From contig NC_068989.1 of the NCBI RefSeq assembly GCF_001194135.2, positions 59,531,009-59,595,008 of the forward strand: a stretch of 64,000 nt of DNA, read 5' to 3'. The stretch is from Octopus bimaculoides. Its lineage: Eukaryota. The position numbers and the translations under genes were made by a program. Of this stretch, positions 3,395 to 25,896 are shown piece by piece. The notes beneath the pieces are model-generated. The model worked only from the letters and a program-made list of their open reading frames with translations, did no database searches and was not told the origin of the DNA. Each line of letters starts with the position of its first letter. Position 1 is the first letter of the stretch.

Positions 3395-4119
3395 CTTAAG
3401 TTTCCTAGGAAACAATGATCACACTTGTGTTTGATTTGATTCCGAGATGAGCAAGTCGTATTTAAGATGAAAGTGGATTCTGCACAATAATTAAAAAAAA
3501 ACGTTCTTCCCTGTTGTTGAACCAAAATGAAGCACCGAAAACCTTCTCTAAACTCGAGCTCTTCAAAAAGAAGGTTGTGGTGATTGTTTGGTGATGTACT
3601 GCTGAACTCATCCACTGTAACTTCTTAAAACCCGGAAAATCCATTACTGCAGAAATATATTGTCATGAAATTACCCAAAATGAACGAAAAACTGCTACTT
3701 CTCCGTCCCAGACTGGTCAACAGAAGAGGGCCAATCATTCTTCATAACATAGCTCGACCACACGTTTCACTAATGACACCCCAGAAGTTAAGGAAACCTG
3801 GCTACGAAGTTATTCTCCACCCAGCATATTCCTCAGACCTTTCTCCTACCGACTACCACTTTTTCAAGCTCCTTGATGGTTTCCTGAAAGAGAAAGAGTT
3901 CAAAAATCAAACCGATGCTGAAAGTGCGTTCAAAGAGTTCATCAACTCCAGAACTCTAGATTTTTATGTTACCGGAAAAAACAAACTTGAAACTAGTTGG
4001 CAAAAATGTGTTGATTGTATTGGTACTTACTTTGATGAATAACATTTCCGCATTGTTGAAACGTATCGTGATGAATTTCATGTTTCAAAACGTTGCTTAC
4101 TTTTTACTCAACCTGATAT
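3395..4119 (+). mobile_element. Mariner transposon 3' half, transposase pseudogene with 3' TIR
   Basis: ORF 3665-4042 contains LHNIARPH and HPAYSSDLSPTDYHFF (mariner DD34D motifs) and ends CVDCIGTYFDE. TIR-like TTACTTTTTACTCAACCTGATA followed by TA. Confidence 0.9.
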
Positions 4120-10225: not shown

Positions 10226-12094
10226 AACAGAGAGAAAGAAAGAAACAGAGAGAGAGAAAGAAACAGGGAGACATAGACAGAGACAGACAGACAGACAGAC
10301 AGACATATATGCACATTCATCTATTTACAAGTAAATGTCTTTGTTTGTTTGTTTTTTGCTTATACTAAGTATATGTGTGTGTGCGTGTGGTATATGGTTG
10401 CACCCACATATATATATATATATATATANNNNNNNNNNNNNNNNNNNNNNNNNNNNNNNNNNNNNNNNNNNNNNNNNNNNNNNNNNNNNNNNNNNNTATA
10501 TATTATTTCATTTGTTTATCTAAGAACTTTAATGAATTAACTTCTCTAACAAACACCGACCACCATCACTTAATTCCACATCTTACAAACCAAGTTAGCC
10601 GGATTTTGAGAATAAGAATACAATATTTTTCGTAAATAGGTTTCTTCCGATCAGGAGGATCCCTGTATGCTGTATGATTGATCAAATTTTATAGGAGCAT
10701 TTCATTTATTTATTACACTTGCCATTGCTAAGTTTGGATTAATTATTCATCACGTGACAAAATCATATATATAGATATGTGTGTGTGTGTGTGTGTTACA
10801 ATCTCCTCCCTTACCTCACCATATATATATAACATAATCAAGATAAGTAAATAATGGATGTGTGTGCTAGAGAGAGAAGGGAAGAGAGAAGAGTGTAAGA
10901 TAGAGAGATAACTACCTAGATTACGCTTGACATATAAACATATACCTATTCCCCCTCACCCACCCACTGTCTATTTCTCCGAATCTTGACTCCTGACTTA
11001 GCATCAGTCTTTCTTTTTCTCTCTCTCCCTCTCACTCTCTCTCTATCTCTATCTATTTATCTAGCTATCGCATACACGCATGCACACAGGTACTGTATAC
11101 TGCATTCATACATATTTAAATAAACACAAACTGATTACTGTTTCACCCTTACCCTCTTTTGTCATCATAACGCTCTCCCACACATACACACGTACCCTCA
11201 AATCCACAAATACGTTGCTGCCCAGAGAAACAAAGACGGAGACAGACAGACAGACAGACAGACAGACTTGTTATAGATCTACATATATACACATTCATCT
11301 ATTTACAACTAAATTATAAGCATGCCATAGAAAATTCTTACATGTGTGTGTGTGCTGTGTCATTACACTATAGTGTGCGTGTCTGTGTATTACTTGATTG
11401 TACTAAGTATATGTGTGTGTGCTACATGGTTGCACCCACATATATATAATTCTTTATTGCCTACAAGGGACTAAACATAGAGGGGAACATATACATGTAT
11501 GCTGTGTAATTGTATCTAAGTATTAGTGTATGTTGTGTGGTTGCATCTAATTCTATATATGTGTGTGTGTGGTATGATTGTACCTATGTGTATGTGTGTA
11601 TATTCTGTGATTGCGTCTAGTATGTGTGTTCTGTGTCTATCTATACCTAAGTCTATACCTAAAACTGTGCATGTGTTGTATAAACACCAGTTTAAGAACG
11701 ACGTAGACTGAAAATATAGCATCAGTCAAGATTTACACGCTTTAGCTCTAATATTGCATTATATCTGATACTGCACTATATAATTATAGGATATCGATCA
11801 ATCTGTCTGTCTGATATAATTGTCCCTTCAAGTATCTGTTTACAGTACACATCTTCCATCTTGTTACTTTAACGGCACCTTACATACCTTTCTTTAACGG
11901 TACCTTGCATATGTGCTTCTATTTATCTATTGCACCACGTGGTATTTATTTAATACAGCAATTTAAGAACATAGTGTCGTTGGTCACTTTTCTGACAGGC
12001 CACTAATTGGTTTAGTGCATATCTGACGGGAGTGGCATCAGCTTTTGTTTTTTGGGGGGGTCACCAACCGTCTTTCTTAGACTAAATAATCCTT

Positions 12095-12233
12095 TCTACT
12101 ATGGGTACAAGGCTTGAAATTTTGGAGAAAGAAACTGGTTGATTACGTCGACCCCCCCCCCCCCAGTATTTGACTGATACTTATTTTATCGACCTCAAAA
12201 AGGTGAAAGGCAAAATCGACCTCGGCAGAAATT
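12095..12233 (-). mobile_element. SINE family B core fragment
   Basis: Reverse complement of CCGAGGTCGATTTTGCCTTTCACC...GTCGATAAAATAAGTATCAG. Confidence 0.7.
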
Positions 12234-13205
12234 TCTTGAATTAAATAAAAACAATTAGTATGAAAGATAATAATTAACTTCAGCTTACAAGCCTAAACAA
12301 TTCATAGTCTGGGCTCAGTGCTCACCGATAATTAATTTAAAGAGAAGTTAACCAAATGAACTATTCACTAGCTATAAACAAAATATAAATCGAGTTTCTT
12401 GGCACATGAATTCGGAACTCAATTTTTATCCCAGTTGATGCATTTTACTTCATTTATAATACTAAGGCACGACGAAGAGCCTTAATGTGTCCCCATCACA
12501 ATTTTCTTCTTCAACAATTGACAATTCTTGAATAAGCCAAAAGAAAACCTTTATATACGAAACAATTAACAAGCAAAATAAAATGCAATTTTTTTCTCGG
12601 GTTGTAATAAAATAAACTTTAAATTGTTATTTAAAATTTGAGTCATTGGCATAAACCATCAGATTTATGAAAGAAATTAATATAATATCGTATGTCAAAT
12701 ACACTTGTTTTCCAGTATGTCTTTATTCAATATATGTTCGTTGAGCTCAGTATTTTTATGCAATATAATCAATTGTCTGATGCATATTTGTATTTTTTGG
12801 AATTGTTTAGATACATAAAATGGCTGTATTTTAATGTAGAGTCCGATTCCCCATCATCTTGAACAACCCGTAAAACTCCGTTGTCGTCAGCTCTCCCGAT
12901 ACTCTTCCTCTACGTCTCATCGATGTTGTCAAAACGTGGGCTGATTCACAGTTTGGAGACAGCGACGGATTTGGTGCCCGAAGAATCTGTAAGTTCTGAA
13001 GCCAGTTCAGACTGGTGAAACTATCGTCCAAATTAATTGAGCCGGTATTGTAGGTATCAGACGGGTATTTGGATAACCAATTCTCACGCAGTTGCTTTGC
13101 CAAGTTACTCGTCGTGTAAATGGGCATTTTGAGAAATGAAAGTACTCCAGTGCTCAGGAGAACTTCGCTACGGTCCATGGAAGTACCCACCACGGTTTAT
13201 TCTGA

Positions 13206-13346
13206 TTGCCAGCTTGGATCAGCCATCCGATAGTAAGCAAAATTGTATGTAATGCAGGAATATATCGCAGATAGAGTCATTTTGTTTGACGGTCTTACTT
13301 TCATAGTTATACATATTAGGGCAGTATAGGAAAATTGAGGTTTTAC
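13206..13346 (-). pseudogene. foxj1: Forkhead domain N-half (47 codons) of the foxj1-like retrocopy
   Basis: Manual translation, not reported in the ORF track; it ends exactly at W-Q and is followed by non-forkhead 5'UTR sequence. Confidence 0.92.
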
Positions 13347-13508
13347 ACAAGAGTTTGTTTATAATCAATTCTCTGATGCTTATTTGTATTTGTGGAATTG
13401 CTTAGATATATAAAATGGCTGTATTTTAATCTAGAGTCTGATTTCCCCATCATCTTGAACAACCCGTAAAACTCCGTTGTCGTCAGCTTCTTCCGATACT
13501 TCTCCTCT

Positions 13509-13733
13509 ATGAAAGCAAGTCCGTCAAACAAAATGACTCTATCTGCGATATATTCCTGCATTACATACAATTATTTTGTTTATTATCAGATGGCTGATCC
13601 AAGTTGGCAAGCAGAATAAACCGTAGAGGGTGCTTCCTCAGACCGTAGAGCTTCACTCTCCTGGAGTGCTTTCATCTCTCAAAATGCCTATTTACACGAC
13701 GAGTAACTTGGAAAAACAACTGTGTGAGAATTT
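13509..13733 (+). pseudogene. foxj1: Inverted segment of the foxj1-like retrocopy spanning a second exon-end/exon-start junction
   Basis: Plus 13509-13610 reads [34 protein letters not shown]. It is followed by GCAGAATAAACCG (same 5'UTR as minus 13205 onward) and an ATG at 13684 giving MPIYTTSNLEKQLCEN. Confidence 0.9.
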
Positions 13734-14382
13734 TTATGCAATACTTAATTGTGTAAATAAAGAAACAACAAAAATGATTGCTTTCAGACATAAAGCTCTA
13801 TGTTACATTGCACAATGTTAATAGCGGCTTAAGATAGGATGATTCTATTTTTGTTTTTCTCTTAATAATTCTCTCGTTCATATTCCGGAAGTTTATTACT
13901 AAGTATCGTCAGGTCTTAATCCTATTTCAATATTGTTTCAAACTGAAAAACCTACGGTCGACAAATAGTTTTTTTTATATAAGGAAAACAAAGGTTAATC
14001 TCCATAATACGTTAATAACCTAGAGTAACCATTCTGCTATTTTATAAATTGTGTATTTGACTAAATATAAAGAACATTTAATAAATCCATTTATTACAAG
14101 TAAAACTTGTTCGAAGTAATATCAGAGATTCAAAATGTTATACGTTAAAATTTGGCAAAATTATTGTATCTGAACAGTTGAGACTGGCGCATAACATTAA
14201 CATCGACTATCATTGAAAAGCAATTATCTTCTGTAAGCATACGCTAGAAATAGTATTGGCAATTGTTCTTCGAAGCTGACACTCTTTGACGTTGTGATTA
14301 TCAAGCACAAACTTATCATCATCTCTATTTTCAACATTGTTATCTATTTCCAATAAAGGCTGATTGAGAAAAGGAAGGAAAA

Positions 14383-14486
14383 TAAGTTTTGCTTAAGAGC
14401 ACAACGAACCGACTGGTCTAGAAATCGAAACCATAATCTTACAATCATGAGTGCAACGCCCTAACCACTAAGCCACGCGCTTTCAC
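14383..14486 (-). mobile_element. tRNA-headed SINE 5' fragment (another family)
   Basis: Minus strand GTGAAAGCGCGTGGCTTAGTGGTTAGGG...GGTTTCGATTTC: A and B boxes. Confidence 0.7.
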
Positions 14487-14581
14487 ATATGCACACACAC
14501 ACACACGCACATACACGCACACACACACACACACATATATATATTTATATACACTCATACATACGTACATACATACATACA

Positions 14582-20434: not shown

Positions 20435-20950
20435 CTTCGTTATCATCATTAGAACACTTTTCCAGGTGTACCCCGATGTCATTTTCCGTAGTAACACTGT
20501 GAGGGGTATCATACAAATCACAAACAGCAACAGTGATAGGCTATTTTCTTGAAATATGCCAAAATTTTTCCACGTGAAATTAACTCTGTAGTCCAGTTTT
20601 TCATTGATCTCCTAATAAGATTTGATGTTATCAGACACCTGTACCAGCTCAAGACTTTCTAAAATCCAAGAATAGGGGACCATGTCATATGCTTTCTTAT
20701 AATCGATCCACACCATGCCCAGATTAGTAAATGTTTTCTTGCAGTCGTTCAGTACCATTCTGTCTATCAGAAGTTGTTCTTTTATCCCTCGGTTTTTCCT
20801 TCTGCACCCCTTCTGTTCCACTGGGAGTTTTTCATTCATTTCCAGGAAGTTATACACATAATTAGATATTATTCCTGTCATCAGCTTCCACATCAGGGGC
20901 AGACAGGTGGTAAGCCGGTATCCACTGCACTGCCTTTGCTGAGATCCTTT
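20435..20950 (-). mobile_element. R4/Dong-like (RLE-type) LINE RT fragment
   Basis: [13 protein letters not shown]...EQKGCRR...QLLID...WIDYKKAYDMVP. Confidence 0.88.
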
Positions 20951-21550
20951 TGGCAAAGAATTGTTTTACTTGTGGTCAGCCGCTTTGGGATTTGTACACC
21001 GTTGTTGATCATTTTACCCAAATTTCTGGCCTTGTGCCTAAGATATAAACAATTAAGGATAGGGGATTCGTAGAATCGTTATGGTGTTAGCAAAATGTTT
21101 ACCGGTATATATTTCGGATCGCTACGTTTTGAGTCTTAAATCTCTGGCCTACATGCCTATGCTTAAAATAAGCCAAATTAGGCGCCACTCTCGCCACTCT
21201 CGCCACTCTCACCCACATTTTAGCAAATTTACTGGAAAATAGCACCTCCCTCTTCATCCTCACTTTCCTCTCCAAGTGGAACTTGAATAAATTGATGAAG
21301 AATTGGCCGAAGGAATGGGATGTCTTGGCCGACCGTGTAAAACATGACATGTCATCCAGAAGGATTACAAGATATTTGTGGCTCCAAAATAAATTGTAAA
21401 GATAAACATAAATTATTATGAAAATCAGTTAAAAATTAAATTCAGTATAAAAATATACACAAAGCGGTGAGAAGCGCCTCCTAGGAAGAATCCCATCTCC
21501 GACCACCTTCAGCTTGGCGCATGTTTTTTACTCTTTCTCTCCCTCTCCGT

Positions 21551-25682: not shown

Positions 25683-25841
25683 TTATTTATTTTTTTAACC
25701 AGTTGAATATACACAAGATGTCGAAATATCGTTCACTAGATAGCAATGGCACTCTTCTTTTAATTTTAATAATAATAATAATAATAAATATAACAACCAC
25801 CACCACCACGACAACAACAACAACAACAACAACAACAACAG

Positions 25842-25872
<31 letters not shown>

Positions 25873-25896
25873 AATAATAATAATAATAATAATAAT

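What the first reader, a model, noticed from the sequence alone, without database searches (positions are those of the whole stretch)
12752..13743. foxj1 exon joined to itself: candidate circRNA-derived (back-spliced) retropseudogene
Seen in the sequence: the last codons of the exon (GAT CCA AGY TGG CAA, DPSWQ) run directly into ~75-78 nt of 5'UTR and the ATG of the same gene, twice (junctions 13206/13205 on minus and 13610/13611 on plus). There is no GT donor, intron sequence or downstream NSIRHN exon. Sequence repeats with a ~597-nt period (12765 vs 13361). Established knowledge: vertebrate FOXJ1 has an intron right after the WQ codons, and its first coding exon starts in the 5'UTR; non-colinear exon junctions mark circRNA-derived pseudogenes. 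Inference: a ~597-nt single-exon foxj1 circle was reverse transcribed by rolling circle (~1.9 turns) and inserted in the germ line. This is a fossil record of a circRNA of the motile-cilia master regulator in an invertebrate.
Basis: partly seen in the sequence, partly recalled or inferred. Interest (0 to 1): 0.95.

Follow-up and report, generated by a model that had tools for sequence, protein, structure and literature searches.

The report
Circular-RNA-derived foxj1 pseudogene, octopus-like genome
A dead insertion of about 965 bp consists only of one foxj1 exon whose end is joined back onto its own start, flanked by a 14-bp target duplication; it is best read as a reverse-transcribed circular RNA pasted into an octopus-like genome, a rare kind of pseudogene that in the papers I could search is reported only from mouse and human.

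Summary
Window 12766-13729 contains only sequence of the first coding exon of a FoxJ1 gene (78-nt 5'UTR + ATG...ADPSWQ, unit ~597 nt). It is flanked by a perfect 14-nt direct repeat, ATTTTTATGCAATA. The last codon (TGGCAA) runs straight into the first base of the same exon, twice. In the two closest relatives found, that exon is bounded by a textbook acceptor 77/78 nt upstream of the ATG and a GTAAGT donor right after WQ. A conserved 9-mer lies at exon positions 19-27 in both relatives, and at positions 19-27 after the junction in the window, exact in one copy and one mismatch in the other. The junction is therefore donor-to-acceptor of one exon, probably to the base, which is a back-splice junction.

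The architecture is not a 1.9-turn rolling circle. It is two head-to-head pieces: 1.25 turns on the minus strand and 0.4 turn on the plus strand. Their 3' ends face the target duplications, and all three joints have 2-3 nt microhomologies. That is the twin-priming (or snap-back) topology. There is no poly(A), and frameshifts and stops show it is dead.

The parent locus of this species could not be retrieved, so the decisive test stays open. This is a new member of a known kind (circRNA-derived pseudogenes, Dong et al. 2016), with unusually clean mechanistic scars.

The parts
12752..12765 (.). Left copy of the 14-nt target-site duplication ATTTTTATGCAATA. Its last 2 nt (TA) are also the first 2 nt of exon homology, so the left joint has a 2-nt microhomology.
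   Evidence: The only two occurrences in 64 kb flank the insert exactly.
12766..13509 (-). Long segment, sense on the minus strand. Read from 13509 down to 12766 it runs exon position ~294 to 597, then the junction, then exon position 1 to ~440. That is 1.25 turns of a ~597-nt unit. It contains frameshifts and stop codons.
   Evidence: Self-BLAST offset of 596, six-frame translation, tblastn with P0001 covering residues 1-77, 73-119 and 71-181 in shifting frames, alignment to L001.
13200..13211 (-). Junction 1: last exon codon TGGCAA (ends at 13206) joined to the first exon base (13205; TCAGAATAAACC...).
13128..13205 (-). 5'UTR part of the exon, copy 1, 78 nt. The relatives have 78 nt (L001) and 77 nt (L002) between acceptor and ATG.
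13507..13509 (.). Head-to-head joint of the two segments. The 3 nt CTA belong to both: they end the long segment at exon position ~294 and begin the short segment at exon position ~497.
   Evidence: Overlapping BLAST ends at 13509 and 13507; sequence reading.
13507..13732 (+). Short inverted segment, sense on the plus strand: exon position ~497 to 597, the junction, then exon position 1 to ~134 (0.4 turn). Its last 3 nt (ATT) overlap the right target duplication, a 3-nt microhomology.
   Evidence: P0001 residues 148-181 at 13506-13610 and 1-17 at 13684-13734.
13605..13616 (+). Junction 2: TGGCAA (ends at 13610) joined to GCAGAATAAACC (starts at 13611).
13730..13743 (.). Right copy of the target-site duplication ATTTTTATGCAATA.

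Best explanation
The insert is a processed pseudogene copied from a circular RNA.

Inferred origin of the template: in the germ line of an octopus-like cephalopod, the first coding exon of a FoxJ1-family gene (~597 nt: 78 nt of 5'UTR plus 173 codons ending in ADPSWQ) was back-spliced. Its donor after WQ joined to its own acceptor, giving a single-exon circle.

Inferred insertion: a reverse transcriptase acting at a staggered chromosomal break, most likely a non-LTR (LINE) enzyme working by target-primed reverse transcription, used this non-polyadenylated circle as template. It was primed by 2-3 nt of chance complementarity rather than by an oligo(T)/poly(A) match.

Shown: two stretches of cDNA ended up in the genome.
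- One is 744 nt long, runs 1.25 times round the circle, and therefore needed strand displacement (rolling-circle synthesis).
- The other is about 226 nt and also crosses the junction.
- They lie head to head, with their RNA-3' ends next to the two copies of a 14-bp target-site duplication, and are joined through a 3-nt microhomology.

Inferred: this is what twin priming produces, where both 3'-OH ends of the staggered break prime on the RNA and the two cDNAs then anneal. A single cDNA that snapped back and copied itself gives the same picture.

Shown: the copy has since decayed. It carries frameshifts and stops, and its internal repeats differ by 6-18%. It has no forkhead second half and is non-functional as a gene.
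For: 1. Content. All of 12766-13729 aligns to one exon of FoxJ1, and nothing else is present: no intron, no upstream or downstream exon, no poly(A).

2. Junction equals splice sites.
- In L001 and L002 the exon starts at ...ttttttgtag|GTGAACGG and ...ctttttag|GTGAACGG, 78 and 77 nt before the ATG. It ends at TGGCAG|gtaagt.
- L001 and L002 are 87-88% identical inside these limits and only 51-56% identical in the 100 nt outside them.
- The window UTR is 78 nt.
- The best ungapped register puts the first base after TGGCAA on the first exon base for copy 1 against both relatives. For copy 2 the correct register is best against L001 only by 24 versus 23 matches, and against L002 the -3 register scores higher (27 versus 25). 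The main anchor is therefore the 9-mer GGTGCTTCC, which sits at exon positions 19-27 in both relatives and at positions 19-27 after the junction in the window (exact in copy 2; GGTACTTCC, one mismatch, in copy 1).

3. The intron after WQ is general. 38 of 41 FoxJ1 loci have GT straight after the Q codon. The 2 cDNA-like contigs read WQ|NSIRHN, the normal linear splice. All 10 relatives in alignment A1 read WQ then V (GTN).

4. Retroposition scars. There is a perfect 14-nt TSD unique in the window, and microhomologies of 2, 3 and 3 nt at the three joints.

5. More than one turn. The same-strand repeat has a 596-nt offset.

6. One event. Overall divergence of the a/a' pair (6.8%) and the c/c' pair (11%) is not significantly different (Fisher p = 0.20).

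7. Precedent. circRNA-derived pseudogenes defined by a non-colinear exon junction and few 3' adenosines exist in mouse and human (PMC4897178). Twin priming with microhomology-joined cDNAs is the proposed model for L1 5' inversions (PMC10760644).
Against: - The parent gene of this species was not found, so the splice sites are inferred from relatives that are about 75% identical in the one N-terminal coding stretch I aligned (146 nt) and only ~37% identical ungapped in the UTR.
- The first four bases after the junction read (G/T)CAG, which looks like the end of an intron. Only the ungapped register with the relatives says these bases are exonic.
- Within the inverted pair, the UTR part is much more diverged (18% plus indels) than the coding parts (about 6-7%; Fisher p about 0.01). 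Pure neutral decay after one event does not predict this.
- Both inverted copies share a Trp-to-Cys and an acidic-to-Tyr change at positions conserved in all relatives. Either the template already carried them, or the arms were homogenised later.
- The nick sites implied by the TSD do not resemble the L1 TTTT/A consensus, and no responsible element is identified.
- There are no RNA data.
Confidence: 0.7

Rival explanations
1. The template was a linear transcript with the exon repeated in tandem. This could arise by trans-splicing between two pre-mRNAs ('exon repetition'), or by normal splicing of a parent gene that carries a genomic duplication of the exon with its flanking intron parts. It was retro-copied by internal priming.
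For: Each of the two segments covers less than two exon units, so an E-E linear RNA could template both. The junction sequence would be identical to a back-splice junction.
Against: Both cDNAs would have to start and stop inside the E-E part of a longer mRNA. No exon 1, no downstream forkhead exon, no 3'UTR and no poly(A) is present. The relative's locus L001 has a single copy of the exon in 20.7 kb. From general knowledge, exon-repetition transcripts are much rarer than single-exon circles.
Confidence: 0.1
2. The circular template is the same, but the architecture has a different cause. One cDNA of 1.25 turns was made. The inverted 0.4-turn arm then arose either because the cDNA 3' end folded back on itself (CTA pairing with TAG at about 13307-13309) and copied itself, or through a later DNA-level inverted duplication.
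For: A snap-back predicts exactly the observed arm, the reverse complement of 13069-13306, starting at a 3-nt self-complementarity. The shared Trp-to-Cys and acidic-to-Tyr changes and the near-identity of the inner 66 nt of the arms (97%) would fit a later duplication or gene conversion.
Against: A later DNA duplication would have to land exactly between the insert end and the right TSD copy. Snap-back and twin priming cannot be told apart from the final sequence. The outer parts of the arms are more diverged than the same-strand repeat, which argues against a younger duplication.
Confidence: 0.25
3. The structure was made by DNA-level rearrangement of an ordinary gene fragment or ordinary processed pseudogene, through tandem duplication plus inversion, with breakpoints that happen to fall at the exon ends. 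Alternatively, it is a short-read assembly artefact.
For: The window comes from a gap-rich, repeat-rich assembly (3726 N).
Against: Two breakpoints would have to hit a donor and an acceptor to the base. The region 12000-14500 has no gaps. The repeated parts differ by 6-18%, so they are not collapsed or duplicated reads. The insert is framed by a TSD.
Confidence: 0.04
4. It is a live foxj1 exon, or an alternative first exon, of a real gene.
For: A 120-codon ORF remains at 12831-13193 on the minus strand.
Against: Several frameshifts and in-frame stops are seen relative to P0001. There is a stop two codons after each junction. Neither copy of the WQ codon is followed by GT. There is no second forkhead exon in the 64 kb.
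Confidence: 0.01

Closest known systems
circRNA-derived pseudogenes of mouse and human (Dong et al. 2016, Cell Res 26:747; PMC4897178), e.g. the circRFWD2 exon6-exon2 copies
   Same: Both are recognised by a non-colinear exon-exon junction at splice sites. Both contain only circle-resident exon sequence. Both lack a real poly(A) tail and are inherited in the germ line.
   Different: - This case is a single-exon circle (exon end joined to its own start).
- It has more than one turn on one strand, plus a second, inverted segment.
- It has a clean 14-bp TSD and microhomology at every joint.
- No flanking LTR sequence was recognised.
- The host is an invertebrate (octopus-like).
- The mouse copies are LTR-associated, and the authors call their mechanism 'mysterious'.
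LINE-1 5' inversions by twin priming (Ostertag & Kazazian 2001; summarised in PMC10760644)
   Same: There are two oppositely oriented segments of one RNA inside one TSD pair. The RNA-3' ends face outward, and the inner joint is made through microhomology.
   Different: - The template is not a LINE and has no poly(A), so both primings are internal.
- The two segments overlap completely on the template instead of being adjacent. That is possible only because the template is circular or repeated.
- The implied nick sites do not match TTTT/A.
Ordinary processed pseudogenes (retrocopies of linear mRNA)
   Same: Intronless, flanked by a TSD, and decayed.
   Different: Exon order is circularly permuted. 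There is no 3'UTR or poly(A). Only one exon of a multi-exon gene is present.
Inverted-repeat pseudogene and hairpin-RNA loci that give endo-siRNAs (mouse oocytes, Drosophila hpRNAs). This comparison is recalled from general knowledge and was not tested.
   Same: The two arms (about 235 nt, 89% identical) with a 200-nt spacer would fold into a long hairpin if transcribed (-373 kcal/mol, z = -30.7). They match the parent's 5'UTR and start codon region.
   Different: There is no evidence of transcription or small RNAs. The hairpin is a by-product of how the insert was made.

Membership tests
circRNA-derived pseudogene ('high-confidence' class of Dong et al. 2016) | Non-colinear exon-exon junction: the 3' end of an exon is joined to the 5' end of the same or an upstream exon | tested here: met
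   TGGCAA|(T/G)CAGAATAAACC occurs twice: at 13206/13205 on the minus strand and 13610/13611 on the plus strand.
circRNA-derived pseudogene ('high-confidence' class of Dong et al. 2016) | The junction coincides exactly with the splice donor and acceptor of the parent gene | tested here: inconclusive
   The parent locus of this species was not retrievable. The feature is met by proxy. In the two closest relatives the acceptor lies 77/78 nt before the ATG and the donor directly after WQ, with conservation dropping from 87-88% to 51-56% at both limits. The window junction aligns to these limits without gaps, anchored by a 9-mer at exon positions 19-27.
circRNA-derived pseudogene ('high-confidence' class of Dong et al. 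2016) | Only sequence of the circle-forming exon(s); no introns, no exons outside the circle | tested here: met
   The whole of 12766-13729 is accounted for by one exon. There is no NSIRHN exon in the window.
circRNA-derived pseudogene ('high-confidence' class of Dong et al. 2016) | No or a very short 3' poly(A) | tested here: met
   Both outer ends run directly into the TSD.
circRNA-derived pseudogene ('high-confidence' class of Dong et al. 2016) | The corresponding circRNA exists in RNA data | not testable with these tools
   No RNA-seq access. No paper on a foxj1 circRNA in the searchable library.
LINE-mediated (target-primed) retrocopy | Target-site duplication of about 7-20 bp framing the insert | tested here: met
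   A 14/14 identical repeat, with only these two occurrences in 64 kb.
LINE-mediated (target-primed) retrocopy | 3' poly(A) tail and a TTTT/A-type nick site (mammalian L1 type) | tested here: not met
   There is no A tail. The implied nicks are ...CAATA/CTTAA and ...AAAAAT/ACTGA. This excludes a textbook L1 poly(A)-primed event. It does not exclude TPRT by another LINE clade using microhomology priming.
Twin-priming inversion | Two segments of one RNA in opposite orientation, RNA-3' ends outward next to the TSDs, inner joint with microhomology | tested here: met
   The segments are 13509 to 12766 (minus strand) and 13507 to 13732 (plus strand), and they share CTA at 13507-13509.
Twin-priming inversion | The two segments are neighbouring, non-overlapping parts of the template, with a small deletion or duplication at the joint | tested here: not met
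   The short segment (exon positions 497-597|1-134) is nested inside the range of the long one (294-597|1-440). This is compatible only with a circular or repeated template and a strand-displacing RT, or with snap-back.
Functional FoxJ1 gene | Intact reading frame encoding a complete forkhead domain | tested here: not met
   Frameshifts and stops are present. The domain stops at WQ, and the second half is absent from the window.

The most novel reading that the evidence does not exclude
In cephalopods a LINE-type reverse transcriptase can run round circular RNAs and paste them into the germ line by twin priming. This automatically builds inverted-repeat loci. This one would be a ready-made hairpin against the 5'UTR and start region of foxj1. 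If transcribed, it could yield dsRNA, either as endo-siRNAs or as an ADAR substrate, that feeds back on the motile-cilia regulator. On this reading the insert is a regulatory by-product of circRNA retroposition and not merely a fossil.
Probability: 0.04. Interest if true: 0.8.

Novelty: new member of a known kind. Interest (0 to 1): 0.55.

Why it matters
circRNA-derived pseudogenes are known from a handful of mouse and human cases, and the authors who described them call the insertion mechanism 'mysterious'. If confirmed, this locus adds three things.

1. It is evidence that the phenomenon exists outside mammals, in a cephalopod-like genome. My searches of the paper library found no primary report from any non-mammal.
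2. It is an unusually legible record of mechanism. It has a 14-bp target duplication, no poly(A), microhomology priming, more than one turn (so strand-displacing rolling-circle reverse transcription in vivo) and a twin-primed or snap-back inversion. Together these point to LINE-type target-primed reverse transcription, not an LTR route.
3. It is indirect proof that the first coding exon of a FoxJ1-family gene was circularised in germ-line or early embryonic cells of that lineage, which RNA-seq can test.

It is a single decayed locus with no sign of function, so its value is as a mechanistic and evolutionary marker.

Tried and rejected
- Parent locus. A protein search with the pseudogene translation, one with a frame-corrected alignment and a degenerate-pattern scan of metagenome contigs gave only two relatives in the same FoxJ1 sub-clade (P0001/L001 and P0002/L002; 61-65% amino-acid identity; about 75% nucleotide identity in the one N-terminal coding stretch aligned). 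Everything else was 44% identical or less over full length. An exact look-up of the 120-aa window ORF found no contig.
- Another copy or a parent gene in the window: none (self-BLAST, tblastn).
- Single 1.9-turn rolling circle: rejected, because the second junction lies on the opposite strand.
- Tandem-repeat and RNA-family explanations: TRF found nothing, Rfam nothing, ARAGORN nothing.
- A-to-I editing as the source of differences between the copies: by eye the differences are not A/G-biased on the sense strand (transitions 6 of 10 and 16 of 25). Dropped.
- An acceptor upstream of the ATG as a universal FoxJ1 feature: a crude splice-site score shows it clearly only in the two closest relatives and plausibly in a few others. 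I do not claim it is universal.
- The bacterial promoter/terminator scan is irrelevant to a eukaryotic locus and was ignored.
- The RT-like ORF at 20612-20956 gave no PDB sequence match, so its identity is unverified.
Full report
**What is in the sequence**

Reading 12000-14500 and translating both strands shows that 12766-13729 consists of fragments of one FoxJ1 exon.

The minus strand from 13127 downward encodes MPIYTTSNLAKQLRENWLSKYPSDTYNTGSINLDDSFTSLNWLQNLQIL... This includes the FoxJ1-specific N-terminal LDDSxTSLxWLQ motif.

The minus strand from about 13350 down to 13206 encodes [46 protein letters not shown]. That is the first half of a forkhead domain up to the WQ that precedes NSIRHN in intact Fox proteins.

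A protein search gave FoxJ1 first-exon ORFs as the only hits, all carrying Pfam PF00250. With frames corrected, the translation is 65% and 61% identical to the two best hits, P0001 and P0002.

The copy is dead. tblastn with P0001 needs three frames to cover it. There are in-frame stops, and a stop follows two codons after each junction.

**Geometry**

Self-BLAST of the region against the whole window gives two relations only.
- 12764-12912 equals 13360-13509 on the same strand, at an offset of 596.
- 13069-13306 equals the reverse complement of 13507-13741.

I number the exon e1 (first UTR base) to e597 (last base of the Q codon).
- The minus strand from 13509 to 12766 reads e294...e597|e1...e440, which is 1.25 turns.
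- The plus strand from 13507 to about 13732 reads e497...e597|e1...e134, which is 0.4 turn.

The two pieces therefore meet head to head at 13507-13509, where the 3 nt CTA belong to both. Their RNA-sense 3' ends point outward.

Immediately outside lie the only two copies in 64 kb of ATTTTTATGCAATA, at 12752-12765 and 13730-13743.

The left joint shares 2 nt (TA) and the right joint 3 nt (ATT) between exon and target. There is no A-run at either outer end.

That is not what is there.

**Is the junction a splice-site-to-splice-site junction?**

The parent gene is not in the window and could not be found elsewhere. I used the two closest relatives instead: L001 (an ENA assembly contig of 177 kb) and L002 (a Logan contig).

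In both, the exon starts after a textbook polypyrimidine-AG.
- L001: ...ttctttattttttgtag|GTGAACGGACC
- L002: ...ttatttttttttctttttag|GTGAACGGACC

These starts lie 78 and 77 nt before the ATG. Both exons end at AGTTGGCAG|gtaagtaatta.

L001 and L002 are 68/78 identical in the UTR part and 478/545 in the coding part. They are only 59/115 and 60/107 identical in the 100 nt outside the two limits. The limits are therefore real exon boundaries.

The window's UTR is 78 nt in copy 1 (73 nt in copy 2, which has deletions). For copy 1 the best ungapped register against both relatives puts the base after TGGCAA on the first exon base. For copy 2 the ungapped scores do not pick out that register: it is best against L001 only by 24 versus 23 matches, and against L002 the -3 register scores higher (27 versus 25).

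The placement of copy 2 therefore rests on the 9-mer GGTGCTTCC. It occupies exon positions 19-27 in L001 and L002, and positions 19-27 after the junction in the window (exact in copy 2; GGTACTTCC, one mismatch, in copy 1).

On the donor side, the intron after WQ is general.
- All ten relatives in alignment A1 read WQ and then V, that is GTN.
- Among 41 FoxJ1 loci pulled from metagenome contigs, 38 have GT directly after the Q codon.
- Two cDNA-like contigs read straight on into NSIRHN, which is the normal linear splice.
- One runs off its contig.

The window junction thus joins the donor of the exon to the acceptor of the same exon, probably to the base.

One caveat. The four bases after the junction read (G/T)CAG, which looks like an intron end. 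The register with the relatives says they are exonic, but only the parent locus can settle it.

**Most likely origin**

Four features together define a circRNA-derived pseudogene as Dong et al. use the term (PMC4897178):
- an exon end spliced to its own start;
- nothing but that exon;
- more than one turn on one strand;
- no poly(A).

The 14-bp target duplication and the 2-3 nt microhomologies at all joints point to target-primed reverse transcription at a staggered break, primed by chance complementarity.

The head-to-head arrangement, with 3' ends outward and a microhomology joint, is the topology proposed for L1 5' inversions by twin priming (PMC10760644).

A fold-back of a single cDNA on itself would give the same product. 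Its CTA-3' end would pair with TAG at about 13307-13309. I cannot separate the two models.

Either way, the 1.25-turn segment requires the polymerase to displace its own product. That makes it a record of rolling-circle reverse transcription in vivo.

Which steps are shown and which inferred:
- Shown: the sequence architecture, the TSD, the microhomologies, the pseudogene state, and the coincidence with splice sites in relatives.
- Inferred: the circle itself, the enzyme, the cell type (germ line, because the insert sits in an assembly), and the single-event origin.

**Things that do not fit neatly**

The two same-strand copies differ by 6.8%, and the coding parts of the inverted pair by about 6%. 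The UTR part of the inverted pair differs by 18% and has several indels (Fisher p about 0.01). The inner 66 nt of the arms are 97% identical.

Both arms also share a Trp-to-Cys change (YSCIT versus YSWIT) and an acidic-to-Tyr change (ITYNF versus ITENF). These positions are conserved in all relatives.

Possible explanations, none tested:
- gene conversion between the closely spaced inverted arms;
- a complex mutation in the UTR;
- a template from an already relaxed paralogue.

**Rivals**

A linear transcript with the exon repeated (by trans-splicing or a duplicated parent exon) would give the same junction. It then needs both cDNAs to begin and end inside the repeat, and it leaves no trace of other exons or of a tail. 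L001 has one exon copy in 20.7 kb. I give this 0.1.

DNA-level rearrangement with two breakpoints at splice sites, or misassembly, is very unlikely. The region is gap-free, the copies are diverged and a TSD frames the insert. A live exon is excluded by the disablements.

**Host**

The window is AT-rich (about 33% GC). It is full of microsatellites and assembly gaps (3726 N), and it carries transposon remnants. The only database homologues of the intact gag-like ORF at 36142-36915 are from Octopus sinensis (78% identity) and O. bimaculoides (51%). An octopod cephalopod is therefore the likely source. This is indirect evidence.

**Comparison and novelty**

The kind is known: circRNA-derived pseudogenes in mouse and human. 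Those are mostly multi-exon and LTR-associated, and their mechanism is undefined.

This case differs in four ways:
- the circle is a single exon;
- there are more than one turn plus an inverted second segment;
- the TPRT scars are clean;
- the host is an invertebrate.

My library searches found no primary report of such a pseudogene outside mammals and nothing on a foxj1 circRNA. That is absence from one searchable library, not proof of absence.

I class it as a new member of a known kind with informative structural detail. Confidence is 0.7 that it derives from a circular RNA. Interest is 0.55.

Noticed in passing
window 13128-13205 vs 13611-13683: The 5'UTR part of the inverted pair is far more diverged (18% substitutions plus 8 gap columns) than the flanking coding parts (about 6%), while the inner 66 nt of the arms (13241-13306 vs 13507-13572) are 97% identical. 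Simple neutral decay after one event does not predict this. Gene conversion between the arms or one complex mutation are possible explanations.
   Followed up: partly
window 13262-13270 (minus strand) and 13543-13551 (plus strand): Both inverted copies share TGC (Cys) where all relatives have Trp, and TAC (Tyr) where the relatives have Glu or Asp (YSCITYNF vs YSWITENF). The template therefore already carried these changes, or the arms were homogenised later.
   Followed up: partly
window 13069-13741: If transcribed, the inverted arms would form a hairpin of about 235 bp with a 200-nt loop (-373 kcal/mol, z = -30.7). It matches the parent's 5'UTR, start codon and half forkhead domain. There is no evidence of transcription.
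   Followed up: partly
window 3665-4042 (+): Remnant of a mariner-family transposase. The C-terminal catalytic half matches the human SETMAR/Hsmar1 transposase domain at E = 1e-44 and Mos1 at E = 2e-15.
   Followed up: yes
window 36142-36915 (+): Intact 257-codon gag-like ORF with a CCHC zinc knuckle. Its only database homologues are from Octopus sinensis (78%) and O. bimaculoides (51%). It suggests a young retroelement and hints at the host's identity.
   Followed up: partly
window 20612-20956 (-) and 25703-26338 (+): ORF fragments that look like retroelement reverse-transcriptase pieces by eye (e.g. ...GMVWIDYKKAYDMVP...; ...ILWDMPIHTDREIKANRPDIVVKD...). The first has no PDB sequence match, so the identity is unverified. 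They may be relevant as a possible source of RT activity in this genome.
   Followed up: partly
window ~14400-14470 (-): A stretch resembling a tRNA-derived SINE head (GCGCGTGGCTTAGTGGTTAGGGCGTTGCACTCATGA...) sits next to long (ACAT)n, (AC)n and (AT)n microsatellites. ARAGORN calls no tRNA here.
   Followed up: partly
whole window: The window contains 3726 N in many short gaps, nearly all inside microsatellites. It is a short-read, repeat-rich assembly. The foxj1 insert region 12000-14500 is gap-free.
   Followed up: yes
L003 694-720 and L008 645-670: These two metagenome-collection contigs read ADPSWQ|NSIRHN without an intron, so they look like cDNA (metatranscriptome) contigs. They show the normal linear splice product for comparison.
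   Followed up: partly
L001 10544-20741: No second forkhead exon lies within 10.2 kb downstream of the exon in the closest relative, so the intron after WQ is long there. From general knowledge, long flanking introns are a feature associated with exon circularisation.
   Followed up: partly
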